Source of the DNA: Macrostomum lignano
Taxonomy: Eukaryota
Reading direction: 5' to 3'
Length of the DNA stretch: 30,924 nucleotides
Assembly: GCA_002269645.1 (NCBI GenBank)
Contig: NIVC01004935.1
Coordinates: forward strand, 1 to 30,924
The notes below the pieces were generated by a model. That model saw only the letters and a list, made by a program, of their open reading frames with translations, was not told the DNA's origin and did no database searches. Each line of letters starts with the position of its first letter. Position 1 is the first letter of the stretch. This document shows, piece by piece, positions 377 to 21,523 of this stretch. A program made the translations under genes and the position numbers.

Positions 377-1200
377 ATGTCTTACCAGATCTATTCTGAT
401 TGGAGTTGTTTCAATCTACTCTCATTTCAGCTTCGAATCTGCAACTTCAACGAGGAGAGTAAGAAGCTGTTACCAGCATCTGGGCTCTCCCTCGCCGAAT
501 TAAGAACTAAGGGCTGCACTAAATTAGGCATAGAAGATGCTGAAAACGTGCGCATCGTTACAGCCGACGGGTTCGAAATCGACGATGACGAAATTATAGC
601 GGAGGTAGCTAAAGAAGGAGGGAAATTTTTTTCTCCTTCAAGGTGAACTGGTCCCAGTGCCACCTAGTCAATTGCTGCCTGAACCGTCCACTGTGTCTAA
701 AGTGGATCGGACACCGGATGCAGTGAACATAGCTGCAGCATCTGATCTGACAGTATTAGTGACACCCAATCGAGTCCAGCAAACCCCAGCCGATACTTTG
801 ATGGCGTGGCCTGCGGTGTACTCGCTTCCTCGTATGGATTTCCTTAGCGATGCTCTTTGCGAACTTCGAATGCACCCTGATAAGGGTGTGGATTTCAAGC
901 TGAACTCAGCATTTGTTAATAAGTTCCTAAAGTTTATTGTCGACGACGTCACCTCGAAGTATTTGTCACCAACTAATCCGTACCTATCATCGAGCCAATT
1001 AACGGACATCTGTACGGCAATCATCACCTCGTATCGTGGCTTAAAAGACCGGTCTCAGGATGGGAGCTCAAGCTTTTGGCGTACGAAGGTTATTCGCCGG
1101 TTCAAAGAACTTCGATTCGTTGGTAATTTTGCCGACAAAGACAGTCCCATCATGCAATCCAGACGTCAAAAGCACGGGCGGAAGAAGGTGAAGATTACCA
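377..1200 (+). pseudogene. CIDE-N-like (ubiquitin-fold) domain fused to a helical domain resembling SAMD3-like/transposon-associated proteins; split by a +1 frameshift and interrupted at the 3' end
   Basis: ORF 377-646 has RICN..KK..A..L.EL..K...KLGI....RIVT.DG.EIDDD, matching the CIDE-N pattern by eye. Removing one T from the T7 run at 626-632 joins it to ORF 657-1271 (KFFLLQGELVPVPPSQ...AIITSYRGLKD...FWRTKVIRRFKELR). Possible splice acceptor ctcatttcag ends at 430. Confidence 0.5.
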
Positions 1201-1836
1201 GCAGTGCCGGTCTGAGTGGAGTTTTGGGGCATCAAAACTGGCCCAAAGTTTTGGCCTGGCAATTGAATTAGGTGACTGCATACTAATCTCGGTATACCAA
1301 CCAGTCAAAGGCGTCGAAGGCTACGACAAGAAAACCTCAGAAATACGGAATGAACTCGAAAGACTCATGACAAAGGTAGGACAAAAGAAGGCCATTTTCA
1401 TCGGGGCGACTTCAATGCATCAGTAGGAAGCAACAATACAAGAATGAACCCGAAATCTGGAACCCCGTTCACCTGCATAGGAAAATGCAACATGCAAACG
1501 GCTAACGAACAAGGAATATATTTAATGCTGTGGATGGAAGAGTGGAACCTGGTATGGACAAGCTCCTTCTTCAAGCAAAAGTAGGGGCACTTGGAAACAC
1601 CCAAAAACGAAGAGATGGTACGAACTGGACGGTTTCCTGGTAAGAAAAGACCAGAGGCACAAGACCGTGAGAAAAGTGTACACGGACCACAGCCCGAACC
1701 TATCAGATCACCTACCGAAGGTCTTTTGGATACACCCGAACTTGACAAACAAATCAAGAAGATCATCAAGAAGAACAAGGCGACAGCGATAAAGAAGCAA
1801 AAGAGGAAGAGGATCCAGTGGGAAAAACTAATTTAA
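1200..1836 (+). mobile_element. Fragment of an RTE-clade-like non-LTR retrotransposon: C-terminal half of the apurinic-like endonuclease
   Basis: Frame-hopping translation gives ILISVYQP...IFIG-GDFNASVG...NEQG..L...W..SFFK...GTWKHPKTKRWYELDGFLV...SDHLPKV. GDFNA, TWxHP, xDxxLV and SDH are APE motifs; TWxHP is typical of RTE-type ORFs. Confidence 0.75.
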
Positions 1837-2294
1837 TCAGGTCAGATATGCGAAGCCAAGCTGTTGCTGCTGGAGTTGCAACCAAACTTACTGATGCGCA
1901 AATTGCCTAAAATTTGATTCTAGAGCACTCTGCTCAGCCATTTCCAGTATTCATCAACGTTCAATGAGGCTTTTTAAGTTAAACTAGAGTAGTAGGGAAG
2001 ATATGCTTTTGCCCTACTGTCAGTAGTTAAAGCCAGGGAAAATATTCATAGTAGCGTTAGATCGCAAATTTGCGGCTTTCTTATAATTATTGATAAGTTC
2101 TTTGTTGTTTTCCTTTATTCTGGTTGCTGGTTGCCTTGGTAACCAACAAGCTTTAAAGTATTGAGATACTACAGGTATCCACAGTGTGGGCCTTCGGGTA
2201 TCTCTTGCTTCACTGCGAGTTGGCATCTGGGGTGGCCACCTACCTGGCGTCCGGCACCGGCTTCTGCTGCAGCATCGCTCTTCGAGCAGGCACT

Positions 2295-2400
2295 TCTCGG
2301 CGGCTCTCGGCTCTCGGCGACTCTCGGCGACTTTTGGCGGCTCGGCTCGACGGCTCGGTCAGGCGGCTCGGCGGCTCGGCGGCGGCGGCGGCTCGGCGGC
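2295..2400 (+). repeat. GC-rich (CGGCT/CGG)n-type microsatellite in the 5' UTR of copy 1
   Basis: Repeated ctcggcgg/cggctcgg units. A similar tract lies at 12605-12655 in the copy 3 leader. Confidence 0.85.
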
Positions 2401-2672
2401 TCAGCTGCGGCTTCAGGCGGCGCCAGGCTTCGCCCAGCGGTCTGCAACCGGCCGGCCGGCGGCGCACGACTTCTGCAACGAGGCGCCAGGAAGCTGCTGT
2501 TTAGGTTTTTCAGTAGCGTAATAGAATAAGGACATTCTCTTGTATTTAGCCGACCTAGGTCTACTTAAAGTAGTATTATTTAAGTTTTAATTTTATTTAT
2601 ACAGTTTTAAGTTTTAAGTTTTAATTTGTTTTAAGGACTTTTCTTGTATCTTGGCCACTGTTTTAAAGGCCT

Positions 2673-5441
2673 ATGGAAATCGAAATTAATAGCAAACGGT
2701 GCTCACGAGACACTGACTCGCCGCCGACGGTGTCGACCAAGAAGGTGAACAACCGAGACTCTGCCGGCCCTGTCCGCAGATCCGAACAACGAACCATGCT
2801 GTCTCCGTCAAACGCGCCACTGCCAGAAACTCCACCTGGTACCTCAAAAGGTGAGCTGCCTCCTTCTAAAAGGGGTAGTCTAGAAGTCATGAAAGCTGAA
2901 GGTGTAACAACAATTATTAGACTACCAAAACCAGACAAATCAGACAGCAAATCATACAATCTACCAAATAATTGCAACATTAGTTACCATCCATCGGCTC
3001 TAAAAAATTGCGACAATCAAATTTTGAAAATTCTCGTTGACGAGATTCAGGCGAAAGCCTTTCACCACCACACCAACGGTAGACCGGAAGCCCGGAAAAT
3101 CGTTTGGTTTGGACCAGAGTACACCTATGGTGGTACTAAAATTAGTGCCAATGACAACTGGCATCCCCTTGTCACTAGCCTAGCCACCTGGCTCAGAGTC
3201 GAGTACCAGCTTCCCGTCTTCAACTCATGTTTGATCAATTTCTACAAAGACGGATCGATCAACATCCCCTGGCACTCTGATGACGAGGTAGAGTTAGGGC
3301 CTAACCCGACTATCGCATCCATCTCGATTGGCGCAACGCGCGACTTCCACATGCGCCCCAAAGGCTCAACTAACATCGCATGGTCTCAAAGACTCGCCAG
3401 TGGCTCGCTGCTGGTAATGAGCGGTGCAACACAATCGCACCTTCAACACGCGGTCCTCAAAGACCCCAAAGTCAAAGAGCTCAGAGTCAACCTCACGTTT
3501 AGACTTACGCACGATGCTAGGATCCCGGAAGAACTTCCTGTCTCTGACCAGGCAAATCCTTGTATCCAACCAGTCGACAACAGCATCACTTGCGATCTTG
3601 ATGATGAAGACTCGGTTCGCCGACGGGCAGAGCTGGAAGCGGAAAATTTAAGACGAATTAGATCGCGTTCAAACAGTAGCACGGGGCGCAAACCTAGCAG
3701 TCAGCAGCCAACCACTCAAATATCTCAACAAAACAACATGCAAATTGCTCACGAACAGCAATCAACCATTAGCAAGCACAACTTGCAGCAACAAGCCAGC
3801 ATGCAAATGCAGCCGCAGCAGCCGCCATCTGACAACTCACAGCAAACGCTCATCCACTTGACGCCGCCGACAACAACACAACAGCAACAACAAACTGAAA
3901 CTAAAACAACCTGCAATAGCCAACCTAGCCAAACTAGCCAAAATAATCAGCTAAATCAACCTAAAACTCAAAGCCAAACTAGCCAACTTAGCTCTAATCT
4001 AACCAGCCAACCTAACACTGCAAGCAGCAACTATCAACTAAGAACTAATGACAATTCAAAACCTAAAAACTCAGCTCCAGTCATCTTCGAAATTGAGCAT
4101 GAAGGCAAGGATCCCATAAAATTTGAATGGTTTCTAAAAAACAACTTTCCTGAAATTAGAATTAAATCGGTCAAAGATCTGTACCATAGCTCAGGCTACA
4201 TTGTAACTCGAGAACATCCTAAGGATTACAATAAATTACTAACAGCACCACTTAAAACCAACAAAATTAATGAATTTGAAATTACAAGACGCATGGCAGC
4301 CAAGAGGCCAGTAAAACAAGGGGACGATCAGGTGCGTGCACCTCTTAAATCTCCTCAGGTGTACTGTTTCATTGTCAAGCACGTCCCCATTGCGGTGGAC
4401 GCTAAAGAGTTAGCCAAACACCTGGTAGAGTCAGAGCAGCAAATTCCGATTGATGGCGCCGTGCGCATCATCTATAAGGCAACAGGTGAACCATCACCGC
4501 ATGTTCGCCTCTTCACGAAGAGTAAGGGCGCAATGGAGAGATGCATTGAGCACGGCGTCCATCTAGGCTTCAGCAGGTTCAGGTGCGAGGAGTCGATTAA
4601 TCTTCCACCTGTCAAAGCCATCCAGTGCATGAAGTGCCAAAGATTAGGGCACCATGAGAATAAATGCACTGCGTCAGTATACAGATGTAACAAATGCGCA
4701 GGGGAGCACTTCTCAGCCGACTGCCCCAAGGACCGCAAGTTCGAATGCGCCAACTGCGGGGGCGAGCACCCGCAGTTTTCATTTAAATGTCAAAAAATCA
4801 AGGAAGCAAACGAAATTGCAACTAGAAAAGCACACGAAAAAATCAGAGCACAAAGAGAAGAAGCAAAACAAAAACAAAATCAGAACATCTTTGGTAGTCG
4901 GTCCCTAGGGGAGGCTTTTGGGGTACCAGGACCGCTATCCTACGCTGACGCAATGCGACCAATGCGAACTGGACTCATCAAGCCAATCCTGGGTCCTATC
5001 GCGTATTCCAACCGTGCCGCCGCCGCTGCCGCCGCCGCCGCTGCCTCTGCCGCTAGCGATGCCCCACCAGCCGAAGCGCCGGCGAATCGAACTGCTCTGA
5101 CCAATCCGGCGGCAATCCAAATCTCCGCCAACCCGCCCACGCTGCCGGCAGTTGCCTCCGACTCCGTGGCCGCGCCCAATCTAGGAGTTGAAAACGCCAA
5201 TGACACGCGCAAATCAAGTGAGAGGGGCCTAATCTCCCGGATGGGGGTGCTCGAGGTTGTACTTCAGGCACTCACTCGGCTCATGGGCACTAATCCGGGG
5301 CAGATGCTCACTGAATGGGAAGCGGGGCAACTCGCGATCCAGGCAGTGACTGAAGTCCTGGCAGCACTCAGGAATCGAAGGGGACCTGATTCAGGGACAG
5401 GGGACACCGAAGCCGCGCAAGCGGGCGGAGATGAAACCTGA
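2673..5441 (+). CDS. ORF1p: AlkB-like 2OG-Fe(II) dioxygenase, Q/S/T/N-rich linker, gag-like region with three zinc knuckles
   Basis: Uninterrupted 922-aa ORF. AlkB motifs at ~3060-3503. Knuckles CMKCQRLGHHENKC, CNKCAGEHFSADC and CANCGGEHPQFSFKC (CX2CX4HX4C, CX2CX3HX4C, CX2CX3HX6C) at 4626-4790, the arrangement typical of Jockey/I-group ORF1. Confidence 0.92.
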   Translation: MEIEINSKRCSRDTDSPPTVSTKKVNNRDSAGPVRRSEQRTMLSPSNAPLPETPPGTSKGELPPSKRGSLEVMKAEGVTTIIRLPKPDKSDSKSYNLPNNCNISYHPSALKNCDNQILKILVDEIQAKAFHHHTNGRPEARKIVWFGPEYTYGGTKISANDNWHPLVTSLATWLRVEYQLPVFNSCLINFYKDGSINIPWHSDDEVELGPNPTIASISIGATRDFHMRPKGSTNIAWSQRLASGSLLVMSGATQSHLQHAVLKDPKVKELRVNLTFRLTHDARIPEELPVSDQANPCIQPVDNSITCDLDDEDSVRRRAELEAENLRRIRSRSNSSTGRKPSSQQPTTQISQQNNMQIAHEQQSTISKHNLQQQASMQMQPQQPPSDNSQQTLIHLTPPTTTQQQQQTETKTTCNSQPSQTSQNNQLNQPKTQSQTSQLSSNLTSQPNTASSNYQLRTNDNSKPKNSAPVIFEIEHEGKDPIKFEWFLKNNFPEIRIKSVKDLYHSSGYIVTREHPKDYNKLLTAPLKTNKINEFEITRRMAAKRPVKQGDDQVRAPLKSPQVYCFIVKHVPIAVDAKELAKHLVESEQQIPIDGAVRIIYKATGEPSPHVRLFTKSKGAMERCIEHGVHLGFSRFRCEESINLPPVKAIQCMKCQRLGHHENKCTASVYRCNKCAGEHFSADCPKDRKFECANCGGEHPQFSFKCQKIKEANEIATRKAHEKIRAQREEAKQKQNQNIFGSRSLGEAFGVPGPLSYADAMRPMRTGLIKPILGPIAYSNRAAAAAAAAAASAASDAPPAEAPANRTALTNPAAIQISANPPTLPAVASDSVAAPNLGVENANDTRKSSERGLISRMGVLEVVLQALTRLMGTNPGQMLTEWEAGQLAIQAVTEVLAALRNRRGPDSGTGDTEAAQAGGDET
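3000..3510 (+). other. AlkB family (ALKBH2/ALKBH3-like) dioxygenase domain within ORF1
   Basis: RKIVWFG.EYTYGG...FNSCLINFYKDG..IPWHSDDE.ELG..PTIASISIGATRDF...L.SGSLLVMSG.TQ..LQHAV.K....RVNLTFR. HSD His codon at 3273, distal His at 3447, Arg codons at 3483 and 3501. Confidence 0.93.
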
Positions 5442-5472
5442 ACCTGACAATTAAATTACGTTTAGCGTTAAC

Positions 5473-8105
5473 TTGATATCAAATTTCAACTCATCTAATA
5501 ATTCCCCTGATAATAATGGGCCGGGTAAACAGTCTGTTGTGCGGGACACTCTGAACATTGGACATCTCAACTGCAACGGGCTTAGCAACAAATTCTATGA
5601 GATAATATCCTGGATCAACAAAGAAGACTTAGACATTGGGCTTTTCTCTGAAACATGCCTAGAAGAAAAAAACAAATTTCACTTACCAGGGTACGCCACG
5701 CTCCGGTTTGACGTCCCTAACTGTAGAAGAGGACTTGCAGTTGTCTATAAAAATCATTTAGAAATTATGAATGTTGAAAAAAAATTTTGACAACTGCAAC
5801 CACGAGCTTATCAGTTTTGAAGTTCATCTTAAAAATAACAAACTTAAGCAATTTAACGTGGTCCTCTTCTACAGGAACCCGACTCCAACACGGCTTAACA
5901 CCCAACTTCTTGATCATTTATTCTCTAATCCCTCGACCTTAGTTGTCGGGGACTTTAACTGCAACCACCCAGCCCTCGTGGTGACTCCCAAACTAACTAT
6001 CCTGGCAAGCAGCTGTTTGATAGGCTTGACTCGCATCCAAACCCACCAACCATTCTTAACGATTATGGGGACTGTACCAGAGTCAGCTACCGTAGTGGCT
6101 TAGTCCTTAGGAACGTGCTTGATCTAGGAATTTGTTCCCCGGAGCTAATTAAACATACCAGCAACGTTATTGTGGGAGAAGATCTAGATAGCGACCACCT
6201 CCCCATTATCATTAAAATTTATTTAAATCCTAACTGTAAGCTGAGCAAAAAACCCACTAAAAGCTTTTGGAACACTGACTGGGAAACCTTTAGAGGGACC
6301 CTTCAGGATAAACTTAGCAACCAACAGCTTCTCAGTCGCAGATTATCCACACCTGAGGACCTAGACAAAGCGGTTGATCTGCTAAATCAGTGCATTCATG
6401 ACACCATTGAGGATGTTGTACCCAACCGGGACCCTAGGGAACAGCTTCCCCCAGATATTATTAACAAAATTAAGCATAGGAGGAAACTTAGAAAATTATT
6501 CAAAAAAACTAGAATAGACGACTTCAGGGTTCAAGCCAATCAAGCAGCTAAAGAAATTCGAAATGCTATACGTATGCATAGATATAGGAAATTCGAGGAT
6601 CTATGCCACAAAATTGCTAAAACTAGTTACAAAAAGGAACCCAAAAAATTTTGGATTGACATCAAAAAGATGACAGGAGAAAGGTCCAAAATGATCAACT
6701 ATCCCCTTCTAGTCTACAAAGATTCGCATGCCGAGACTGAGGCAGAAAAAGCTTCATTCTTCAGCGACTTTCTTAAAGATCAAATGCAATCTCACCCCAA
6801 CCACGACTCGCTAATCTATGAAAATGTCAGTAAGTACAAAGATCATGAGATCTTCAAAACCCATAACAATATAATTGCGGCACTTTCATACCATAAAGAG
6901 CACGCGAACCCAGATAATCCAGATAAAGAAGATATCGAAAACGATATCCTTAACATTACTGACCAGGACGTGCTCTGGGAAAGCAGAAAACTTAGGTCAG
7001 GAGGAGCTCCCGGTCCGGATAGAATTCCTAACATGGTTTTAAATATTGTCTCGGCCCAGACTCCATCAGAGCGCTCGCAAAAATTTACAACTCTAGTTTT
7101 CTCATAGGATACTTCCCTAAACAATGGAAAAAGGCCATCATTAAGATGATCCCTAAACCAAACAAATCCAAAAATCTCGTGGAAAGCTATAGACCCATCA
7201 GCCTAACCTCCTGTGTTGGCAAACTTTATGAGAAGATTCTAGCTAGAAACCTTAAGATTATCTTAGAAAACCTAGGAATTATTAATGAGGAACAATGTGC
7301 CTACAGATTCGACCACTGCACATATGACAATATAGTAAGACTCACCGACGATGTGCTGAAAATGCTTCAGTTGAGGCAGTACACGTTGGGGGTCTTCTTA
7401 TCATCAAAGGAGCCTTTGATGGAGTCTGGCTGGACTACCTTAAATATAAAATCTGGAAAAGTAAAATCCCGCACAACATGACACGCATTATAGCAAATTA
7501 TCTGGATGACAGATCTGTGGAGCTGGTGGTTGGCGGAGCCCGGGGCGGGGTCTTTCAGCCGACGGCGGGTGTCCCGCAGGGTGGGGTGCTCTCGCCCCTG
7601 CTCTTCATCATCTTCGCCAGCTCTATTCCTAAGCCCACTGATAGCAAAGTCCGCTTTAGTCAGTTCGCTGACGACTTAGCAGTATGGGCCTCTGCCAGAA
7701 AATCTACCATGTCCGCTAAAAGGCTTAACTCCTACTTTATTGTCCTCAAAAAGTGGCTTGACAATTTGGGCATTGTCATCAATCCCTCCAAAAGCAAAGC
7801 CATTTCCTTTTTCAAAGCTAATGGGAACAAGACAGGTATAGACGATCCTCCAATTAAGCTTGGACAAGACAAAATCAAGTACTATGATTCCGTCACCTTC
7901 CTAGGGATGGTTCTTGACAAACAGTTTAACTTTAGGGCCCATATCGACAAGGTAGCTGGGTCTTCGACAGCCAAAATGGCTGCCCTAGCTAGGATAGCTA
8001 AGAACTCCAGGATTTCGCAACTGGCTCTTCGCCTAATCTATAGATCTTACATTGAAAGCACAATGACTTACGGCGCTCCGGTGCTCATCAATCTACTGGC
8101 TTCCC
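5473..8105 (+). pseudogene. ORF2 of copy 1: APE endonuclease plus reverse transcriptase, four frameshifts, 3'-truncated
   Basis: APE motifs GHLNCNG, LFSET, GDFN, SDHLP. RT motifs YRPISLTSCVGKLYEK, KGAFDGVW, GVPQGGVLSPLLF, QFADD (7664-7675). Frameshifts near 5780, 5978, 7048 and 7400. Confidence 0.92.
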
Positions 8106-8109
8106 TTAA

Positions 8110-8880
8110 GCCAACTGCAGTGGTGAGCACACGTCGTATTCTCACAAATGCCCAGTAGCTATTAGGGCACATCGCCTGGCAACTGAAAGGGAGCGCGAGA
8201 GGGTGCACAGTCTACGACAACAGTACGACTACGACTGCTATCAGCAAAACTTACCAGAAGCCTTTCCGAGGCCGCAACAGTTCTCCTACTCTGCAGCAGC
8301 AAGCCGATCAGCTGTGACAAGCCAACTGCCTCCAATGTACAACGCGTGCCCGGCTGGTCCCCCTGCGGCGGTCTCGGCGATGGCCTCTGCAGCGGTTGAC
8401 CCGGCAACCGAGCCTGCATCCCACCCCGCGGCGGTCCAGGCGATGGCCTCCGCGGAGGTCGTCCCGGTACCTGGCCCCTGCAGTGGCTCAGGCGACAGCC
8501 CCTGCAGCGGTGGCCTCAGGCGCGGGGTCAGCATCGACTGTTAACCAGACCGAGCCGGTGACCTACGGACCGAAGGCGAGTTGGGCCAAACCAAATCATG
8601 CGGCCACCAATTATAACCATACCAAAAACAGTAGCTCAAAAATTTACTCACAAACAGATATTCTCAGGCTGGCCATGAGGGCCTTGAGTAGCATCCTGGA
8701 GATGGGCTCGGGCTTCTCTGCGACGCACAGACTGCGGGGGAACTCGCAGTCCACGTTGTCATTGAGGTCCTGGGCTCACTCTCGGAGCTACAGGGTCAGG
8801 GAGCTGATGGTGGGGCAGCTGCATGGTAAGCTGTTCACCTTCAGGCCCCGAACTACTTGTTACCTGAAACTTAAGAGCGC
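8110..8880 (+). pseudogene. C-terminal remnant of copy 2 ORF1 (last knuckle, Ala/Pro-rich repeats, terminal helix)
   Basis: NCSGEHTSYSHKC...AHRLATERERERVH parallels NCGGEHPQFSFKC...ANEIATRKAHEKIR in copy 1. IYSQTDILRLAMRALSSIL parallels LISRMGVLEVVLQALTRLM. One frameshift in between. Confidence 0.75.
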
Positions 8881-8882
8881 GC

Positions 8883-11760
8883 ATGTCAGTGTGTAACAGT
8901 AACAGTCACAGCTCAGTTACCAAGAATGGTTCGAGGGTAAACAACTGCTCTACTACGCTGAAAGTGGGGCATTTAAACTGTAACACGATTTCAAATAAGC
9001 TGCATGAGGTTATATGGTGGGTTCGAGACGAAAACATTGATATAGGCCTTTTTTCCGAGACGTGTCTGACCAAGGACAATAATTTCTTCATACAGGGATA
9101 CGCCATCCTGAGACTAGACGTTCCAGACTGCAGGCGCGGGCTTGCCATTGCTTACAAGAGTCATCTTATTATTGACGGGGTTAAAAAGTATTTTGATAGT
9201 CAAACTCATGAGTATATCAAGTTTTCAGTGCATCTCCCTGGCAACTCTTTCAGGAAGTTTGATATCACGCTGTTCTATAGGGCCCCCGGGCTCCCCGACT
9301 GTCTTAAGACGGATCTGCTTGAGCAGTGTCTATCCTCCCCATACTCCCTTCTGTTAGGAGATCTCAACTGCAGGCATGGGTTTCTTGGTGGTGATAGTGC
9401 TCAAAATTACCCTGGGAGGCAGCTTTTTGATTGGCTCGATTCGCATGCGGATCCCCCTGTCGTTCTCAACAAGTTCGGGGATTACACGCGGATCTATAAC
9501 CGCTCTGGTAAAAACCTAGGCAATGTGATTGACCTAGCTATGTGCACTAGCAGGCTTGCTCCCTTCTCCAGTGAGGTCTCCGTGGGTGAAGATCTAGACA
9601 GTGACCATCTTCCCATAGTTGTATCTCTGTCCATTGATCCCGCTTGCCACAAGGCAAAGCTCCCGCTCAAAAGCTTCGGGAAGACTGATTGGGAGTCCTT
9701 CAGATTCTCGCTACAGGACAAGCTTGACAACATCAGAATTCTAAAATCTGATATCTCTACCCCTGAAGAGATCGACCAAGTCGTGGACAATCTGTCTTCG
9801 GCTATCACTGACACCATCAATGAGGTGGTCCCTGACAGAGACCCTAGAGAGCAACTCCCACCGGACATAGTTAGAAAAATTAAGCACAGGAGGCATCTTA
9901 GAAAATGCTTCAAGAAGACTAGGGACGATACGTTCAGGATTCTTGCCAATCAGGCGGCCAAAGATATCAGAGTAGCTATCAAGAATCACAGATACAAAAA
10001 GTATGAAGATAGCCAAAAATAGTTATCGTCACGAACCACGTCGCTTCTGGGAAGACGTGAAAAAGATGACTGGCGAAGCCAAGAAAAGGATAATCTACCC
10101 TACACTGAAGCATAATGACGCCACTGCAGAAACAGAGGCTGAAAAAGCGAACCTTTTCAGATATTTTCTTGACTACCAAATGCAACCCAAGCCTAAGCCT
10201 GGGACTGAGTACTATAACAAAGTCATCAATGCTCGATCGCGAGAAATCTTCAAGCCCCATGAGGGGATCTTTCAGGCTCTGTCCTACTTTAGAGAAAACC
10301 AGGCTGTTGAGGGCAACAATCAAGAAGTGTCTGAGGCTGACCTTCTTGAGATCATAAACATAGATGTTACAATGGCTATAAGCAGTCTTCGGCTCGGGGG
10401 AGCCCCAGGCCCCGATAAGATCCCCAATGTCGTCCTCAAGAAGGGCCTGAGCCCCAACTCCATCAGGGTGCTTACTAAGCTGTTCAATACTTGCTCCCTG
10501 CTTGGGTACTTTCCCAAAGCCTGGAAAAAGGGAATCATAAAGATGATTCCCAAACCCGACAAACCCAAAGGTCAAATTGACAGCTACCGCCCCATCTGCC
10601 TAACTTCCTGCTTAGGAAAATTATATGAAAAAATACTCGCTAGAAACTTTCGAACCATTCTTGAAAACCGTAACATTATTAGTTCCGATCAATGTGCATA
10701 TCGCCAAGATCACTGCACCTTTGACAACATAGTCAGGATCACAGATGACGTTCTAAAAATGCTGCAGCTTGGGCAATACACCCTTGGTGTCTTTTTTGAT
10801 GTTAAGGGCGCCTTTGACGGCGTTTGGCATGACTCGCTACGCCTTGATCTTCTCGACAGTGATCTTCCTCACAGCCTCATGAGGTCCATTTCTAGCTACC
10901 TTGACGACAGAGAAGTGCTGGTCCAGGTTGGGGGGGGGGGGCTGAGTGAGAGCCTCAACCCGGCGGCAGGTGTTCCCCAGGGAGGTGTCCTCTCGCCGCT
11001 CCTCTTCCTGGTTTATGTCAACAAAATTCCGCTTCCTGCTGACAGAAAGGTTCGCATTAGTCAGTACGCAGATGACCTGGCCGTTTGGGCCAGCGCCAGA
11101 ACTTCATCACTTTCTGCTAAGCTGCTAAATGCCTACTTCAAGAAGCTCAAAATCTGGTTAGACGAGGTTGGGATAATTATCAACCCAAATAAGAGCAAAG
11201 CAATTTCTTTTTTCAAGCCCTTGGGCAATCACCGGACAGGACCTGATAGGCCCCCCTTGCTGCTTGGCAATCAGTCCATTCCTTACTATGACTCTGTGCG
11301 TTTTCTAGGAATTATCCTTGATAAACAGCTCACCTATAAACCTCATCTCATCAAGGTAATTAATTCTGCGCAGAACAAGCTCCTTGCGCTGCAGCGCCTT
11401 GCTAGTAATACCAAAATCTCCCAGCAGGGGCTTAGACTGATTTATAGGATGTATATTGAGAGCTGCATAATTTATGGCGCTCCAGTCTTGATACACCTCA
11501 AGGATGCTCAACTCAACAAGTTGCAGCTGCTACAGAACAAAGCGCTGAGAACGTCACTAGACGCTCCACTGTGCACTAAAATTAGTTACTTACACTACAT
11601 CACCAAAATGCCGATGATCAAAGAGCGCATTTGGAATCTAGCCAAGCGCTGGTACAGAAACACCGAGATGTCTGGAGTACACAACTTCGACCTAGACACC
11701 AAGAAATGGGATAGGAGAGGGTTCAGGATGCCTGCAGTGGCCCGTCTGAGAAATGTCTAA
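8883..11760 (+). pseudogene. ORF2 of copy 2: APE plus RT, single frameshift near 10005-10020, no RNase H
   Basis: ORFs 8883-10022 and 10003-11760. Motifs GHLNCN, LFSET, GDLN, SDHLP, DVKGAFDGVW, GVPQGGVLSP, QYADD (11065-11076). Ends KKWDRRGFRMPAVARLRNV* with no RNase H motifs. Confidence 0.95.
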
Positions 11761-12721
11761 TGTGGCACCCATGCTGTGCTTAGGTTCAACTGTGAGCAGT
11801 ATTGTCAAACAAGAGCAATTATTGAATAAAACCTAACAAACTCTTGATGTAATTGTAAAAAAAAATGAAATGTCAAATAAATCTGTGATAAAATTTTTTT
11901 TACACCAGAAAATATTCATGACAATACATGTATACAATTTTATTGTACAACTAACAATTATTTCATTTTATGCCAATATTCCAAATATTTAATGCCAATA
12001 TGCCAAATATTCAATATACAATAACACTGACGCAACTTTGCCTATACCCCTCGCCTCTTTGTGCTCTGCTTCATCTTCTGTCTCTCTCCCGACTTTGAAC
12101 TGTACATGTTTTAATCATCTCTACTGTTTTAATTTGTTTTTACATCTCCTCACAATTTCCTTTTTCGATTTGTTCTAATGCCTTCGTTCTCTTCATCTTC
12201 GATTCACCTTAGTCAGATTTGTTTTATTGCTTCGATTGCTACTTTATATATTATCTGATGCACTGTTTTATTTGTTTTATTTTATGCACTTTTTAACAAA
12301 ATATTGAAATCGAATGTCAATAAAAACTCGATAACCTACAAATACATTGTGCGTAAGAGCCGAAAAGGCTGCAGCGCCGGGCCTATTTAAGCCCAAATAC
12401 TCAACAATGAATGAATGAATGTTGTTTTCCTTTATTCCGTACCTGCTCAACTTGCTTGCTTAACACCGCCTGCTCTACATTGCCTGCTCTACATCTCCTG
12501 GTGCTCTCCGGCTCTACTGCAGCATCGCACTACGTGCAGGTCCTACATCGGTCTTTATCTGCAGCGGCGTCAGCGGCTACGCACTGCGTGCTGGTCCTAC
12601 TTCTTGGTGGCGGCGGCGGCTCGGTGGCTTGGCTCGGTGGCGGCGCCGTCGGCTCGTGCGAGACAGCGGCTTTTAGCGCCAGACTTAACGCTTTCAAAGA
12701 TGCTTGACTGCTTGACTGCTT

Positions 12722-14778
12722 GATCATCAAAGATGTCCTCCCGCAAGCCTTTCACCATCTAACTAATGGTAGACCAGAAAAAAAGAAAAATTGTCTGGTA
12801 CGGCCCGGCATACACCTATTCCGGTGGTAGTCTGGAAGCCAATGAGGCCTGGTACCCGGAGTTAACCAAGCTAGTTACCTGGCTCCACGTCGAACTTGGG
12901 CTACCACTGTTCAACTCCGGCCTAGTAAATTTTTACGAATCGGGGCATGTTAACATCCCCTGGCACGCTGATGACGAGACCGAACTTGGCCCCAATCCGA
13001 CAATAGCCTCTATTTCGCTGGGAGCTACAAGAGAATTAGCCATTAGATTAGATCCAAGCAGTCCAAAAACATTGTTTTTAAGCAACCTCTCGAGTCTGGC
13101 AGTTTGTTGGTAATGAGTGGTGCACTCAGAAATATTTTGAGCACAGCATCTACAAAGACCCTAAAGTAAAAGACATTCGCGTTAATCTCACCTTTCGAAT
13201 GACTTCTGAAAATCTGGTCTCCGAGTCTCCAGCGCCCTCGTTGAACCCTTGCGTTCGCCAGTCGCAGGATCTCATCACTCCCACTGATGATCAGCCAGTC
13301 ATCTCTTGCGACCTTGATGACCAAGACTCTATTCGTAGAAAAGCTGAAGAAGAGCGAGTCAACCTAGAGAAAATCAGAAGGGCTAGCCAATCCAGCATTA
13401 AATCCAGCGCCAACAATAGCCAGTCCAGGCAGACCAAATCTGCACCAGTCATCTTCGAAGTCGCCCTGGAAGGAAATGATCCAATATAGTTTGAGTGGCT
13501 GCTAAAGACTAATTTCCGTAACGTAAGAATCAAATCAGTTAAAGATCTGTGCCACTCACCTGGCTACATTGTCCATCCTGAGCATCCCAGGGACTTCAAT
13601 ACGCTCTTAACAGCTCCAATGAAAATCAGCTCAATTAATGACTTTGAAGTCACCAGGCGCACTGCTGCTAAGAGACCTGTCCACCAAGCTAATGACCAGC
13701 CGAGGGTTCGAGCCCCCCTCAAATCTCCGAACGTTCTCTCCTTCATTGTCCGTAACGTTCCGCTAGCGGTCGACGTAAGCGGTCTAGCCAAGCACCTAAA
13801 TGACTCTGACCAGCAACTCTCAATAGATGGAGCAGTTAGAATTATCTCCAAACAGACTGGCCAGCCGACTCCCTTCGTAAGGCTATTCACCAAGTGCCAA
13901 AGAGTAGTAGATAGCTGCATCCAACAGGGTATCTACCTAGGATTTGTGAAATATAGATGCGAAGAATCTAATAGTCTCCCGCCCGTCAGAGCTATCCAGT
14001 GCAAGCGGTGCTCAGGACTCGGTCACCATGAGGCGCGCTGCACAGCAAACTATAGGTGCAACAAATGCGCTGGCAATCATTTCTCAATGGATTGCCCCAA
14101 AGACCAAGTCTTCAAGTGTGCAAATTGCGGCGAAAACCATCCGGCATTCTCATTCAAATGCTCTAAAGTCCGAGAGGCTAACGAATTGGCAACCCGCAAA
14201 GAACATGACCGAATCCGAAAGCAACAACAACAGCTGAGAGCCCATAAGCCAGAAAACAGCCAGACCCTTGGGGAAACCTTCGGCGTCCCTGGGCCAATCT
14301 CCTACGCAGATGCCATGCGTCCGCAGCCGGTTCTCGGGCCAATAGCCTTCTCTAACCGAGCTGCCAAAGCTGCCGAAGCCCAACGAGCATCATTCCCCGC
14401 CTCATCTGCCAATGCTGCCGCCGCCGCCTCAGTCGCCTCAGCCAACCAGAATGCTCTGTCTGATGCAATCAACACATTTGAGCCGCCAACAACTGCTCCA
14501 GCCAATCCGGTCATGATGCATCCAGGAGTTGAATCAACTAACCAAATAGGACCAAGTGAGAGGGGCTTTTTCTCTCGGGAAGATGTGCTCGATGTAGTGT
14601 TACAGGCGCTCGACCGACTCATGAACATTGAACAAGGACGGATGTTCACATCCTGGGAGGCGGGGCAATCGTCTTCCGGGTGGTGTCTGAAGTCGTTAGG
14701 GTGTTCAGGTGTCAAAGAGGGCCTGTTGCTGAGTCAGGGGACACCAAAGTCGTGCAAGCGAACGGAGGTGAAACCTGA
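12722..14778 (+). pseudogene. ORF1 of copy 3: AlkB domain, short linker, triple zinc knuckle
   Basis: AFHHLTNGRPE-KRKIVWYG...IPWHADDE (His 12964)...SGSLLVMSGA-TQKYFEHSI (His 13142)...RVNLTFR. Several frameshifts and a stop at 13487-13489. Knuckles CKRCSGLGHHEARC, CNKCAGNHFSMDC, CANCGENHPAFSFKC. Ends GGET* like GDET* of copy 1. Confidence 0.9.
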
Positions 14779-14867
14779 ACTCTCTTTCTATAGTCTGCTT
14801 AGCTCTGCTCTATTAATTCAACTCTCCTCGTAATACTTCTACGACTAAGACTAAAAGTCACTCTGTT

Positions 14868-17206
14868 GTGCGGGACTCCCTCATTATTGGACACCTGAAC
14901 TGCAACGGGCTCAGCAACAAAATCTATGAGATAATCTCGTGGCTAAAAAATGAGGACTTAGACATAGGACTTTTCTCTGAAACTGGCTTAGTTGACACAA
15001 ACCCTTTCTTTGTCCAAGACTACGCCATCCTTAGATTTGATAAACCTCACTGTAGAAGAGGCCTCGCAGTTGCTTACAAAAATAATCTAAACATTATGAA
15101 TGTCAAAAAGTATTTTGATAACAGTAACCATGAGTTTATTAGCTTTGAGGTTTTCTTAAAGCATAATAGGCTAAACAAACTTAATATAGTCCTCTTCTAC
15201 AGGGCGCCTAACCCTACCAAGCTAAACTGCGACATTCTAAAAAATCTTTTCACAAATTCCTCCACTTTGGTTATAGGGGACTTCAACTGTAACCACTCTG
15301 CCCTAGGTGGAGACACAAATTACAATTACCCCGGCAGACAGCTCTTTGACTGGCTTGAAAACCACCCCAACCCCCTATTTTATTAAATAACTATGGTGAA
15401 TTCAGCAGAGTGTGTAATCGTGGCGGCTCCCACACCGCTAATGAGCTGGACTTGGGGCTTTGCTCCCCCAATCTTGGTCCTCACACTAGTGAGGTTCCCA
15501 TAGGTGATGACATGGATAGTGACACTTTCCCATCATCATAAAAGTTTACCTTGACCCAAACTGTAAAATTTCGAACCCCCCCCCTAAAAGCTTCTGGAGC
15601 ACTGATTGGGAAACCTTCAGGGCTGTTCTCCAGGACAAACTCAGTGATAAACTAATCAACTATCTCAGGTTGGCCACTCCAGCTGAATTAGATAGGGCTG
15701 TAGACCTGCTAACCCAGGGCTTGCACGACACGATTGAGGAGGTGATCCCAAACAGAGATCCCGCGGACAACTCCCCCAGACATAATAGCAAAAATTAAAC
15801 ACAGGAGGAAACTTAGAAAACTCTTTAGAAACACCCGGATTGACCATTTTATGATTCAGGCGAATCAAGCCGCTAAGGAGATCAGGCTCGCCATCCGTAT
15901 GCATAGATATAGGAAGTTTGAAAAGTTATGCAAAAAAATTTCCAAAACCAGCTACCGAAATGAACCAAAATTTTTTGGATTGATATAAAAAAATGACGGG
16001 GGAAGGTCCTAAACCGATCTCGTACCCCCCAATCGTTCTCAAGGATTCTGTTGCTGAAACTGAAGCTGAGAAAGCACAGGCCTTCAAGGAGTTCCTTGAG
16101 GCTCAGATGCGTCCCTGTCCAGACAGATCCTCCCAGCTCTATAAGAGAATTGAGGCCCAAAAAGATCATGAGATCTACAAACCCCATAACATCTTAGCTG
16201 CGTTAACCTATCATAAAGACCATGCCGATCCTGATAATCCAGACAAAAAAGACATTGAAGCTGATATTCTCAACATCATAGATCAGGATGTTCTTTGGGA
16301 GAGTAGGAAGCTCAGGGCAGGAGGGGCTCCCGGGCCTGACAAGATTCCGAACATTGTCCTCAAATTTGGCCTGAGTCCAGACTCCATCAGAGTCCTTGCA
16401 AAGATCTTTAATGCTAGCTTCCTCCTTGGATACTTCCCAAGCGATGGAAAATGGCTACTGTCAAAATGATACCCAAACCAAATAAACCTAAAAACCTCAT
16501 TGATAGCTATAGGCCTATCAGCCTTACCTCTTGTTTAGGCAAGCTTTATGAAAAAACTTAGCATGTCTGCTAAAATACTCAATGACTACTTTATCCGACT
16601 CAAAAGGTGGCTTGATGCCGTTGGCATTACTATTAATCCCTCTAAAAGTAAAGCAATCTCCTTCTTTAAGGCAAATGGCAACAAAACAGGCCCGGGTGAA
16701 CCCCTGATCAAACTCGGGAACAACATAATTAGTTATTATGACACTGTCACCTTTCTTGGAATGGTCCTAGACAAACAACTCAACTACAAATCTCATATTA
16801 ACAAGGTCGTTGGTTCTACCACAAATAAGGTTGCTGCGTTAGCCAGAATGGCAAAAAGAATCTCCCAGCACGGACTAGGACTGATCTACAGGTCTTTCAT
16901 TGAAAGTACCATCACTTACGGTGCTCCCATCCTTCTTAATCTTCCCGACTTCCAAGTCAACAGAATTCAGGTACTCTAAAACAAGGCTCTGCGCATCTCC
17001 CTTGATGCTCCGCCTTACATAAAAAACTCTTACATCCACTTGGTCACCAACATGCCCATGATCAAATATCGCTACTTAGCCTAGGGAAAAATGGTTCAAA
17101 AAGCGTTAGTGGTATTCACAAATTCAAAGATGACACCAAAGAATGGTTGAGACCCGGCTTTCGAGTCCCGGTCACAGCTGCGCTCAGGAAAAAACTTAAT
17201 GCCTAA
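14868..17206 (+). pseudogene. ORF2 of copy 3: APE plus RT with many frameshifts and an internal deletion of the RT core
   Basis: APE motifs GHLNCNG, LFSET, GDFN. After GKLYEK (~16555) it jumps to LSMSAKILNDYF, skipping KGAFD, PQG and YADD. C-terminus EWLRPGFRVPVTAALRKK aligns with copy 2. Confidence 0.9.
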
Positions 17207-18185
17207 TTTATAGCCAGATTCCTGGCTATAAAACAAATATTGTGCTTTTCAGTTGGAGTTTGGTCTGTCGACCCTCTTCCCTTTGTATAATTGCAATTTT
17301 TTGCCGTATGACGGAACGGCTCCCGAAGTTATCGCCTGCCTTCCAAGGGGTACTAGCATTGGCTAGGCTGCATAGCCCTCTCTATCCACAGCTCCCTCAG
17401 GCGGGGACGTTTTAAACCTGGAACCCCAAACCAGGTGGACCAAAAGGCCCTTAACTCTGACTGAGTGAGCTGTTATTCACCCCGTAGGGTCCAGTTAGCT
17501 ATTTATACGGACAAAGTTTGACTCGACTAGTTTGATTAGGATTTGACATTATATATTGATTATTCCTTGGAATAATTGATTAAAATATAGACACGAGCAC
17601 CTCTCTCCGGGAGAGAATCCAACCTTTACTGCAGGCGTATTCTAATTGATGACTAAGTATTAATCCAATGCAATTATTTTTGTATTCAAATTATTAAGAC
17701 ATCATATTTTTTAAAAATATTGCCAACTGTTTTACCTCATTTTTTCCAATATTGCTAAAAAACTTTTAATTTTGTCCAATATTGCTCAAATATTTTCTTT
17801 GTGTTTTATTCTTTGTTTTTAATCCTAAATTTATAAAAAAATGATCGTTTTAGTTTATTTCTCAAACTCTCAAATTCTTGTTTTACACTTGACCTCATCT
17901 TTTGTTCCTTTTTATACTAGTATTATTTGTTAATAGCTACCCCAAATATTTGTTTTATGTAAATACTCCTCGATTTTATTTTTTTCCTAAATTGGACGAC
18001 TATAACTTCTAATAATTCGAACATACGCGTAAAAATATAAAGTTGCGCAAGAGGCCTTCAAAGGGCTGAGGCGCAGGGCAACATTATATTAGCCCCTACT
18101 TATTAAAGTAAAAAAAGTAAAAGTTGTTTTCATTTATTAATTTTGGCTTTATTTTGTCAACACTTAGTACTAGCATCAATCTGCA

Positions 18186-21405: not shown

Positions 21406-21523
21406 ACTACCTACGCTACTGAGAGTTGAGAGAACTTCCCACTGAAGAGGCTCGAGTCTTAAGGTAATCCTTAAGTGCCTAAACCGGCAAGAAACCCAAC
21501 TGTACTTCACTGGTGACGCAGCG

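What the first reader, a model, noticed from the sequence alone, without database searches (positions are those of the whole stretch)
2673..5441. LINE ORF1 protein fused to a catalytically complete AlkB (ALKBH2/3-like) dioxygenase
Seen: one uninterrupted 922-aa ORF1 joins an N-terminal AlkB domain (HSD 3273, H 3447, RVNLTFR 3483-3503) to a Jockey/I-type gag with three zinc knuckles, directly upstream of APE-RT. Established: AlkB enzymes oxidatively remove m1A/m3C and related methyl marks from DNA and RNA, and AlkB domains are carried in the polyproteins of some plant RNA viruses (Alpha/Betaflexiviridae, Closteroviridae). Known accessory domains of LINE ORF1 include RRM, PHD, esterase and CCHC. 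I do not know of AlkB as a standard ORF1 module but cannot check databases. Inference: the element packages its own demethylase in the RNP, either to repair RT-blocking lesions on the template RNA or cDNA, or to erase host RNA marks used for surveillance.
Basis: partly seen in the sequence, partly recalled or inferred. Interest (0 to 1): 0.93.

Follow-up and report, generated by a model that had tools for sequence, protein, structure and literature searches.

The report
LINE retrotransposon ORF1 carrying AlkB demethylase
A jumping gene (LINE) of the flatworm Macrostomum lignano has fused a complete ALKBH3-type nucleic-acid demethylase to its own RNA-binding protein, and I found no published description of this; it suggests that methyl lesions or marks on the element's RNA limit its copying.

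Summary
Window 2673-5441 (+) is one uninterrupted 922-aa ORF. Its N-terminal part is an AlkB dioxygenase domain (Pfam PF13532, E 1e-27). The HxD...H iron triad and the RxNLTFR 2-oxoglutarate motif sit at the stated coordinates. Best sequence and fold matches are human ALKBH3, then ALKBH2. Next come a ~180-aa Q/S/T-rich linker, two RRM folds and three CCHC knuckles (a 'type I' LINE ORF1), then APE-RT.

The host is Macrostomum lignano. In this copy ORF2 has at least 4 frameshifts and is cut off by another copy, so the copy is not autonomous. An intact element (ORF1 938 aa, ORF2 950 aa) exists on another M. lignano contig, and a diverged intact one in unidentified SRA assemblies.

Three further copies lie in the window; two visibly carry AlkB. 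The domain is under purifying selection (dN/dS 0.11), and catalytic residues are kept in all 12 LINE AlkBs examined. The 5'UTR+AlkB module has been exchanged between LINE lineages (89% against ~65% nt identity).

An unrelated LINE in marine metagenomes carries AlkB between a PHD finger and an esterase, so capture probably happened twice.

Function is inferred: in-cis removal of m1A/m3C-type methyl groups from the element's single-stranded RNA or cDNA. I found no prior description, but could not search Repbase or Dfam.

The parts
2102..2672 (+). 5' UTR of LINE copy A; the 5' boundary is approximate (2102-2130). It contains a GC-rich short-repeat stretch at 2295-2411.
   Evidence: 89% nt homology to the intact element L001 starts at 2130. 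The motif TGTTGTTTTCCTTTATTC is shared with copies C and D at ~2102. Tandem repeats.
2673..5441 (+). ORF1, 922 aa, intact: N-terminal low-complexity region, AlkB, Q/S/T-rich linker, RRM, RRM, 3x CCHC, C-terminal helical/Ala-rich region.
2958..3527 (+). AlkB (ALKBH3-like) Fe(II)/2-oxoglutarate dioxygenase domain, aa 96-285 (Pfam match aa 140-277).
   Evidence: Pfam E 1.1e-27. phmmer against PDB: ALKBH3 96 bits, ALKBH2 70 bits. AF2 model pLDDT 87.2. Foldseek: ALKBH3/ALKBH2 TM 0.77-0.86.
3273..3281 (+). His201-Ser-Asp203, two ligands of the iron triad. Asp204 follows it in HSDDE.
   Evidence: invariant columns H116 and D118 of alignment A1
3447..3449 (+). His259, third iron ligand.
   Evidence: H174 of A1; invariant in A2
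3483..3503 (+). Arg271-x5-Arg277 (RVNLTFR), the 2-oxoglutarate-binding motif.
3528..4082 (+). Q/S/T/N-rich low-complexity linker, aa 286-470. The breakpoint of the exchanged 5' module lies at about nt 3731.
   Evidence: Composition. Identity to L001 drops from 89% to ~63% at 3731.
4083..4592 (+). Two RRM-like domains, approximately aa 471-540 and 564-640.
   Evidence: AF2 model pLDDT 91.6. Best Foldseek matches are tandem-RRM proteins Pub1, HuR and PABP.
4626..4790 (+). Three CCHC zinc knuckles.
   Evidence: All 12 Cys/His columns are invariant across 40 ORF1 relatives.
5548..8092 (+). ORF2 remnant of copy A (APE about 5548-6250, RT about 7150-7910). At least 4 frameshifts, near 5780, 5950, 7040 and 7390. 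It ends at ORF2 aa ~860 where copy B begins.
8077..11760 (+). LINE copy B, 5'-truncated inside the ORF1 knuckle region. ORF2 is nearly intact, with one frameshift near 10006. Its ORF1 tail matches protein P0127, which starts with the end of an AlkB domain (MRINLTFR).
12420..17507 (+). LINE copy C. It has its own 5' UTR, a degraded AlkB (from aa ~120, frameshifted), a gag ORF at 13619-14833, ORF2 with frameshifts and an internal deletion, and a conserved 3' UTR block at 17299-17507 without a poly(A) tail.
18133..20515 (+). LINE copy D. Its AlkB is in frame for 251 aa (ORF 18186-19022) and is 58% identical to copy A's AlkB. A Q-rich linker and part of gag follow; the copy is cut off at ORF1 aa ~762.

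Best explanation
SHOWN. This is a copy of an APE-type LINE (non-LTR retrotransposon) family of Macrostomum lignano. Its ORF1 protein is a single polypeptide. It joins an ALKBH3-like Fe(II)/2-oxoglutarate dioxygenase domain with every catalytic residue intact, through a ~180-residue disordered Q/S/T-rich tether, to the usual LINE RNA-binding module of two RRMs and three CCHC knuckles. The fusion is old, is kept by purifying selection, has been passed between LINE lineages together with the 5' UTR, and sits in elements with intact ORF1 and ORF2. This particular copy has a decayed ORF2.

INFERRED. ORF1p coats the element's own RNA in cis, as LINE ORF1 proteins do. That would place many tethered demethylase domains along the template. 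There they would oxidatively remove Watson-Crick-face methyl groups (1-methyladenine, 3-methylcytosine and similar), from chemical damage or from host methylation, on the single-stranded RNA and perhaps on the nascent single-stranded cDNA. The element's reverse transcriptase could then copy the ~6-kb template without stalling or miscoding. This is the role shown experimentally for AlkB domains of plant RNA viruses.
For: Identity of the domain: Pfam PF13532 E 1e-27. phmmer against PDB gives ALKBH3 96 bits and ALKBH2 70 bits, with E. coli AlkB not reaching E 0.01. The AF2 model has pLDDT 87; Foldseek gives ALKBH3/ALKBH2 TM 0.77-0.86 against E. coli AlkB 0.65 and ALKBH5 0.58.

Catalytic residues: HxD, His and RxxxxxR are kept in 4 M. 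lignano, 4 SRA-derived and 4 PHD-esterase-type LINE AlkBs.

Single-strand preference: the aromatic 'finger' that ALKBH2 and bacterial group 1B AlkBs use to flip bases out of duplex DNA (FGK) is Asn/Lys/Gly in the LINE domains. ALKBH3, which is inactive on dsDNA, also lacks it (alignment; rule from PMC2790896).

Selection: for the AlkB core, dN 0.019 and dS 0.167, ratio 0.11, between copy A and L001. Between A and D, dN is 0.26 with dS saturated. Across deep lineages AlkB is 40-42% identical, against 35-37% for RRM-CCHC.

One protein: there is no stop and no NPGP 2A site between AlkB and gag in any family. The GenBank CDS P0002, derived from RNA-seq-guided transcript models, is collinear with the genomic ORF.

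Active elements: L001 has ORF1 of 938 aa and ORF2 of 950 aa, both intact. L006 has 843 aa and 948 aa.

RNA-binding module: tandem RRM folds plus knuckles.

Precedent for the mechanism: viral AlkBs prefer RNA and repair m1A/m3C (PMC2553587). Base modifications can interfere with cDNA synthesis by reverse transcriptases (PMC12140624 abstract).
Against: No activity, substrate or expression at protein level was or could be tested here. ALKBH3-type enzymes also act on ssDNA, so RNA against cDNA cannot be told apart. The copy in the window cannot transpose by itself. Its intact ORF1 beside a frameshifted ORF2 could mean the ORF1 is used in trans, or that some frameshifts are long-read assembly errors; one lies in an A8T4 run. 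Whether m1A/m3C occur on LINE RNA in this animal is unknown. The nucleotide-recognition lid is shortened by a few residues relative to bacterial relatives, with unknown effect on specificity.
Confidence: 0.55

Rival explanations
1. Counter-surveillance. The domain erases regulatory RNA methyl marks (m6A, or enzymatically written m1A) that the host uses to flag, destabilise or silence transposon transcripts. It would not be repairing damage.
For: An orchid Ty3/Gypsy lineage captured an AlkB that demethylates m6A in vitro (PMC9289625). m6A affects L1 and ERV RNAs in mammals (PMC7873242). Repeated capture by two LINE clades fits an arms race as well as it fits repair.
Against: The domain belongs to the ALKBH2/3 repair subfamily, not to the m6A erasers. 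Foldseek TM to ALKBH5 is only ~0.58 at ~20% identity, against 0.8 at 33% for ALKBH3. The HSDDE Asp that, from my own knowledge of E. coli AlkB (Asp135), contacts the exocyclic amine of 1mA/3mC is kept. Nothing is known here about m6A on these RNAs.
Confidence: 0.2
2. DNA-directed role. The domain repairs 1mA/3mC on the single-stranded cDNA or on exposed target DNA during target-primed reverse transcription, or removes 3mC made as a by-product of DNA methyltransferases acting on transposon copies.
For: ALKBH3 works on ssDNA; its best structural templates are ssDNA complexes 8jnr and 8jnk. M. lignano is reported to retain DNMT1 and DNMT3, and DNMTs introduce 3mC (PMC9246332).
Against: The domain is fused to the RNA-binding ORF1p, not to ORF2p, which handles DNA. 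Nothing shows ORF1p at the integration site. The 3mC-by-DNMT idea concerns integrated double-stranded copies, for which an ALKBH2-like finger would be expected and is absent.
Confidence: 0.15
3. Passenger or non-enzymatic module. The AlkB part is a neutral hitch-hiker, a mere nucleic-acid-binding or oligomerisation domain, or the intact ORF1 here is a host-domesticated gene that no longer serves the element.
For: In this copy ORF1 is intact while ORF2 has at least 4 frameshifts. UniProt and GenBank list these ORF1s as ordinary host proteins.
Against: All catalytic residues are conserved in 12 sequences spanning ~31-94% identity. dN/dS is 0.11. Intact two-ORF elements carry it. Multiple decayed and truncated copies show transposon dynamics, not a single-copy host gene.
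Confidence: 0.07
4. Artefact. The fusion comes from mis-assembly or from a LINE that landed next to a host ALKBH exon.
For: M. lignano assemblies are long-read based and repeat-rich (PMC5730564).
Against: The same collinear ORF occurs in an independent assembly contig (L001), in two further copies in this window, and in short-read SRA assemblies of other lineages.
Confidence: 0.02

Closest known systems
Human ALKBH3 (and ALKBH2) / bacterial 'group 1B' AlkB repair dioxygenases
   Same: Same Pfam family. It has the same double-stranded beta-helix fold with N-terminal lid (TM ~0.8, 33% identity), the same HxD...H and RxxxxxR motifs, and the HSDDE motif. Like ALKBH3 it lacks the duplex-intercalating aromatic finger. 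Bacterial ~200-aa relatives are 39-52% identical.
   Different: Here it is not a free-standing cellular enzyme. It is the N-terminal domain of a retrotransposon ORF1 protein. The lid loops are a few residues shorter. The donor (animal ALKBH3 or bacterium) is unresolved in my tree.
AlkB domains in replicase polyproteins of plant RNA viruses (Flexiviridae, Closteroviridae, some potyvirids)
   Same: A selfish RNA-templated replicator carries its own AlkB inside a larger polyprotein. The role shown there is repair of m1A/m3C in its single-stranded RNA, and the domain spreads between lineages by recombination (PMC2553587). That parallels the 5'-module exchange seen here.
   Different: Here the host is an animal, the replicator is a retrotransposon, and the fusion partner is an RNA chaperone rather than a replicase. 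Fold similarity exists, but sequence identity to viral AlkBs is only 16-31%, so there is no sign of a viral donor.
AlkB (ALKBH5-like) ORF of giant Ty3/Gypsy elements in Phalaenopsis orchids
   Same: A retrotransposon lineage has fixed an AlkB-family demethylase, proposed to act on its own RNA (PMC9289625).
   Different: That case is an LTR element in plants, with the domain in an additional ORF, of the m6A-eraser subfamily, and recent. This one is a non-LTR element in an animal, fused inside ORF1p, of the ALKBH3 repair subfamily, and old enough to span lineages with ~35-40% protein identity.
Type I LINE ORF1p (RRM + CCHC; Jockey, I, R1, Tad1, some L2) and type IV ORF1p (esterase)
   Same: The C-terminal two-thirds is a standard type I ORF1: RRM folds directly upstream of three knuckles with the classic spacing (definitions in PMC4120745). 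ORF1 is known to be modular and to carry one enzymatic accessory domain, the esterase (PMC3905857).
   Different: AlkB is not among the ORF1 domains catalogued there (CCHC, RRM, coiled coil, CTD, PHD, esterase, zf/lz). 'Dioxygenase' does not occur in that survey of 448 elements.

Membership tests
AlkB family, ALKBH2/3 subfamily (Fe(II)/2OG dioxygenase) | Significant match to the family profile (PF13532) | tested here: met
   E 1.1e-27, 97.9 bits against cut-off 31.2, aa 140-277.
AlkB family, ALKBH2/3 subfamily (Fe(II)/2OG dioxygenase) | Iron-binding HxD...H triad and 2OG-binding Rx5R | tested here: met
   H201, D203, H259, R271 and R277. These columns are invariant or nearly so in alignments with bacterial and LINE AlkBs.
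AlkB family, ALKBH2/3 subfamily (Fe(II)/2OG dioxygenase) | Double-stranded beta-helix core plus N-terminal nucleotide-recognition lid, closest to ALKBH2/3 | tested here: met
   AF2 pLDDT 87.2, pTM 0.86. Foldseek gives ALKBH3/ALKBH2 TM 0.77-0.86 over ~200 columns, against E. coli AlkB 0.65 and ALKBH5 0.58.
AlkB family, ALKBH2/3 subfamily (Fe(II)/2OG dioxygenase) | Oxidative demethylation of 1mA/3mC in DNA or RNA | not testable with these tools
   Needs enzyme assays.
APE-type LINE (non-LTR retrotransposon) | ORF2 with apurinic-like endonuclease followed by reverse transcriptase, downstream of ORF1 | tested here: met
   Pfam Exo_endo_phos(_2) and RVT_1 in the window copies and in intact L001 and L006 ORF2. 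In copy A itself ORF2 is frameshifted.
APE-type LINE (non-LTR retrotransposon) | Multiple dispersed copies, including 5'-truncated and decayed ones | tested here: met
   Four copies in the window (one 5'-truncated, one internally deleted), plus L001 elsewhere.
APE-type LINE (non-LTR retrotransposon) | Target-site duplications and a defined 3' tail | tested here: inconclusive
   There is no poly(A). A conserved 3' UTR block ends the element. TSDs were not identified because the copies abut one another.
   No reference RT set (Repbase/RTclass1) was available. The Jockey clade proper is reported as confined to arthropods (PMC4120745). No RNase H domain was found in ORF2, which from my own knowledge argues against the I clade. 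The clade is left open within the APE-type LINEs that have a type I ORF1.
Type I LINE ORF1p | At least one RRM immediately upstream of CCHC knuckle(s) | tested here: met
   Two RRM-like folds (pLDDT 91.6; best Foldseek matches are tandem-RRM proteins) are followed by three knuckles. Pfam itself gives no hit to this part.

The most novel reading that the evidence does not exclude
Methylated bases on the RNA template (m1A/m3C-type, whether from damage or written deliberately by the host) are a general, so far unrecognised barrier to target-primed reverse transcription. LINEs have answered it at least twice independently by building an ALKBH3-type eraser into ORF1p: once in the flatworm RRM-CCHC lineage and once in a marine PHD-AlkB-esterase lineage. 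That would make base methylation of transposon RNA a defence axis comparable to m6A or piRNA control.
Probability: 0.25. Interest if true: 0.85.

Novelty: new variant of a known kind. Interest (0 to 1): 0.72.

Why it matters
LINE ORF1 proteins are thought of as RNA chaperones, with only one known enzymatic add-on, an esterase of unclear role. A nucleic-acid demethylase welded to ORF1p, conserved and traded between lineages, would be the first case of a non-LTR retrotransposon carrying its own base-repair or mark-erasing enzyme.

It points to a concrete and testable limit on retrotransposition: Watson-Crick-face methylation of the template. Wild-type and H201A elements offer a natural experiment for that.

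There is also a practical side. These ORF1s are annotated as host 'Fe2OG dioxygenase' proteins and escaped repeat filtering. They could distort counts of host ALKBH genes in studies that link ALKB2 to DNA methylation in flatworms.

Tried and rejected
1. Word-indexed homologue search with the gag part alone found nothing. The whole-ORF search was swamped by low-complexity words. The exhaustive representative search was used instead.

2. Exact look-up of the window's ORF1 found no record. The species was assigned through near-identical UniRef and GenBank proteins.

3. The donor of the domain is unresolved. The top 120 hits were all ~200-aa bacterial-type AlkBs. But the index also missed the known M. 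lignano proteins. In a 126-column NJ tree human ALKBH3 nests among the bacterial sequences, and the LINE clade sits outside both. I therefore dropped 'horizontal transfer from bacteria' as a claim.

4. A viral donor is not supported: identity to viral AlkBs is at most 31%.

5. A 2A 'ribosome-skipping' site between AlkB and gag is absent.

6. The small 123-124-aa ORFs between ORF1 and ORF2 in L006 and L010 show no similarity to each other and have no Pfam hit, so I do not treat them as genes.

7. The organism behind runs SRR31628392/394/403/434 could not be identified. The one paper with a similar accession concerns another run.

8. The RT clade could not be assigned for lack of reference sequences.

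9. Rfam gave no hit in the window. No LTR direct repeats of at least 80 bp were found around the Gypsy-type element.

10. The other long gag relatives carry no recognisable accessory domain at the same position.
Full report
OBSERVATION. The window holds an uninterrupted ATG-initiated ORF at 2673-5441 (+) of 922 codons, with an in-frame stop just upstream at 2664. HSD is at nt 3273-3281 (aa 201-203), His259 at 3447, and RVNLTFR at 3483-3503. Three CCHC knuckles lie at 4626-4790 with spacings CX2CX4HX4C, CX2CX3HX4C and CX2CX3HX6C. Pfam places a 2OG-FeII_Oxy_2 (AlkB) domain at aa 140-277 with E 1.1e-27 and 97.9 bits, against a cut-off of 31.2. An open frame of this length has a chance probability of about 6e-20 (my arithmetic).

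WHAT THE DOMAINS ARE. Against all PDB sequences, the AlkB part matches human ALKBH3 best (96 bits, E 1.5e-26), then ALKBH2 (70 bits). E. coli AlkB does not reach E 0.01. An AlphaFold2 model of aa 86-300, built on 38 aligned relatives, is confident (pLDDT 87.2, pTM 0.86). It superposes on ALKBH3 and ALKBH2 crystal structures with TM 0.77-0.86 and 31-34% identity. The values are 0.65 for E. coli AlkB and about 0.58 for the m6A eraser ALKBH5.

In alignments with bacterial relatives the iron ligands, the two 2OG arginines and the N..Y pair are invariant. ALKBH2 and bacterial group 1B AlkBs have an aromatic 'finger' (xFGK) that flips bases out of duplex DNA. ALKBH3, which does not act on dsDNA, lacks it (PMC2790896). 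The LINE domains have Asn, Lys or Gly at that position. This argues, by analogy, for single-stranded substrates.

Downstream of a ~180-residue Q/S/T/N-rich stretch, a second model (pLDDT 91.6) shows two RRM-like alpha/beta domains. Its best structural matches are tandem-RRM proteins (Pub1, HuR, PABP). The knuckles and a helix follow. By the published classification this is a 'type I' LINE ORF1: RRM directly upstream of CCHC (PMC4120745). Pfam does not recognise this part.

THE ELEMENT AND ITS COPIES. Near-identical proteins come from Macrostomum lignano (UniRef, 86-99% identity; GenBank BOX15_Mlig014270g2). Behind ORF1, APE and RT coding sequence follows at 5548-8092. It changes frame at least four times, near 5780, 5950, 7040 and 7390. 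It stops at about ORF2 residue 860, where a second, 5'-truncated copy begins. So this copy is not autonomous. One frameshift lies in an A8T4 run, and the species' assemblies are long-read based, so some breaks could be assembly errors.

The window contains three more copies of related lineages, all on the + strand:
- Copy B, 8077-11760, is truncated in ORF1. Its family's protein P0127 begins with the end of an AlkB domain.
- Copy C, 12420-17507, has a degraded AlkB, a gag ORF and a damaged ORF2.
- Copy D, 18133-20515, has AlkB in frame for 251 residues.

On another M. lignano contig (L001, GCA_002269645.1) the element is intact. ORF1 is 938 aa with the same architecture. After 25 nt comes ORF2 of 950 aa with APE and RT. 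The element has no poly(A) tail. It ends in a 3' UTR block that is 80% conserved between lineages whose coding DNA is only ~65% identical.

IS THE FUSION REAL AND MAINTAINED? Several lines say yes.
- No stop and no 2A (NPGP) site separates AlkB from gag in any family.
- The GenBank CDS P0002 is identical to the first 927 residues of the genomic ORF. The GenBank annotation of that assembly was made from RNA-seq-guided transcript models (PMC5730564). This is indirect evidence for one transcript and one reading frame.
- For the AlkB core, copy A against L001 gives dN 0.019 and dS 0.167, ratio 0.11. Copy A against copy D gives dN 0.26 with saturated dS.
- An exhaustive profile-free search of 1.84 billion representative proteins with the gag half found 4504 relatives. 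Among the top 150, the M. lignano entries and four diverged proteins from SRA assemblies (P0129-P0132, 757-962 aa) carry AlkB. The rest, mostly 200-660 aa, do not.
- One of those four sits in an intact element: L006, with ORF1 843 aa and ORF2 948 aa that is 41% identical to L001 ORF2 over its full length.
- Across this depth AlkB is 40-42% identical and RRM-CCHC 35-37%. All catalytic residues and all knuckles are kept.

The domain is therefore an old, selected part of one sublineage of type I ORF1 LINEs, not a local accident.

MODULAR EXCHANGE. Copy A and L001 are 89% identical at DNA level from the 5' UTR through AlkB to nt ~3731 (aa ~350; dS 0.11-0.17). They are only 63-67% identical over the rest of the element, where dS is above 1.2 or saturated. 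Conversely, copy D's gag is closer to L001's (73-79% nt) than its AlkB is (66%). The 5' UTR + N-terminus + AlkB block has thus moved recently between LINE lineages. This fits the reticulate ORF1 evolution described for other LINEs (PMC4120745). It also parallels the recombinational spread of AlkB among plant viruses (PMC2553587).

A SECOND, INDEPENDENT CASE. Four weak hits of the first search (P0003-P0006, 594-634 aa) have a PHD-type finger, an AlkB domain (Pfam E 2e-21 to 2e-23, all catalytic residues present) and a GDSL/SGNH esterase-like C-terminus; the PHD and esterase Pfam matches are below threshold. On their contigs, which are ENA marine metagenomes including a Tara Oceans scaffold, an overlapping APE-RT ORF2 follows. 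Its RT is only 25% identical to the flatworm element's. In a 126-column NJ tree the eight gag-type LINE AlkBs form one clade (bootstrap 0.58) and the four PHD-esterase ones another (1.0). A joint clade is recovered in only 10% of replicates. Two captures are the simplest reading, though support for the first clade is modest.

The donor is unresolved. Bacterial group-1B-like AlkBs are 39-52% identical, and human ALKBH3 is 33% identical in structural alignment. Human ALKBH3 nests among the bacterial sequences in the tree. Viral AlkBs are at most 31% identical.

HOW IT PROBABLY WORKS. Shown: the architecture, the intact catalytic site, the ALKBH3-like fold, selection, and presence in intact elements. 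Inferred: everything about function.

LINE ORF1 proteins bind the RNA that encoded them. Here each bound molecule would carry a demethylase on a long flexible tether, concentrating the enzyme on the ~6-kb template. ALKBH3-type enzymes remove 1-methyladenine and 3-methylcytosine from single-stranded DNA and RNA. Such lesions disrupt base pairing and impede reverse transcriptases (PMC2790896; PMC12140624 abstract). Plant-virus AlkBs, the closest functional analogue, prefer RNA and restore methylated genomes (PMC2553587).

I therefore favour in-cis cleaning of the template RNA, and possibly the nascent cDNA, before or during target-primed reverse transcription (confidence about 0.55 for the whole statement; the identity part alone is near certain). 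The rivals are:
- erasure of regulatory marks such as m6A, as proposed for an orchid Gypsy element (PMC9289625); this is less likely because the domain is of the repair subfamily, not the eraser subfamily;
- a DNA-directed role at the integration site or against DNMT-made 3mC (M. lignano is reported to keep DNMT1/3; PMC9246332);
- a passenger or domesticated protein, contradicted by conservation and by intact elements;
- an artefact, contradicted by independent assemblies.

NOVELTY. Eight of my ten full-text searches (8 million PMC papers plus bioRxiv) targeted this question. They combined AlkB, 2OG-Fe, dioxygenase, ORF1, non-LTR, retrotransposon, reverse transcriptase and Macrostomum. None returned a description of an AlkB domain in a LINE. 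The survey of 448 Jockey-superfamily ORF1s lists CCHC, RRM, coiled coil, CTD, PHD, esterase and zf/lz only. Precedents exist for the idea, in plant RNA viruses and one plant LTR lineage. I therefore rate this a new variant of a known kind rather than categorically new. Repbase, Dfam and subscription journals could not be searched, so an unremarked database entry cannot be excluded.

LIMITS. There is no biochemical or expression test. The RT clade is unassigned; 'Jockey/I' is only a description of the ORF1 type, and the Jockey clade proper is reported as arthropod-only. The organisms behind the SRA and marine contigs are unknown. The tree is NJ on few columns. TSDs were not found because the copies abut.

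Noticed in passing
L002-L005 (e.g. L002 998-2782 ORF1, 2779-6164 ORF2): An unrelated LINE family from marine metagenomes, including a Tara Oceans scaffold. Its ORF1 is PHD finger + AlkB + GDSL/SGNH esterase-like domain, followed by an overlapping APE-RT ORF2. It looks like a second, independent AlkB capture by a LINE. The host organism is unknown.
   Followed up: partly
window 2130-3731 vs L001 9463-11059: The 5' UTR + N-terminus + AlkB block is 89% identical between two LINE lineages that are otherwise ~65% identical. This indicates a recent recombinational swap of the promoter-plus-AlkB module.
   Followed up: yes
window 2102-20515: Four LINE copies of related lineages lie head-to-tail or nested, all on the + strand, followed by an LTR element. 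The uniform orientation is unexplained; it could be chance nesting or a transposon-rich or piRNA-cluster-like region.
   Followed up: no
window 17299-17507 and L001 15800-16030: A 3' UTR block is conserved at ~80% between lineages whose coding DNA is ~65% identical, and the element ends without poly(A). It is a candidate RNA element recognised by the RT. There is no Rfam match.
   Followed up: partly
window ~21500-27000: A Ty3/Gypsy-type LTR retrotransposon (gag-like CCHC, RT, RNase H, integrase by Pfam), split over several ORFs. It appears to cut off LINE copy D. No LTR direct repeats of at least 80 bp were detected.
   Followed up: partly
window 28940-29164, 29343-29529, 30287-30924: Tandem arrays of 44-bp and 50-bp units. 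The last one (unit GATTGGAATAAATGGGATC...) runs to the end of the window. This fits the satellite-rich M. lignano genome.
   Followed up: no
P0001, P0002, P0128 (M. lignano database proteins): These LINE ORF1s are annotated as host proteins ('Fe2OG dioxygenase domain-containing protein', 'hypothetical protein'). They passed a filter meant to drop transcripts overlapping repeats. They could inflate host ALKBH gene counts in comparative studies of DNA methylation and ALKB2.
   Followed up: partly
L006 4346-4717; L010 3269-3643; L011 3177-3551: A 123-124-aa ORF sits between ORF1 and ORF2 in two diverged AlkB-LINE families from SRA assemblies. The two versions share no detectable sequence similarity and have no Pfam hit, so it is probably not a conserved gene.
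   Followed up: yes
window 657-1271: A 204-aa ORF upstream of the LINE has no Pfam match. Its nature is unknown.
   Followed up: no
window 5442-5560: In copy A the ORF2 frame has no in-frame ATG near its start; the first listed start is TTG at 5473. L001 has an ATG 25 nt after the ORF1 stop.
   Followed up: no
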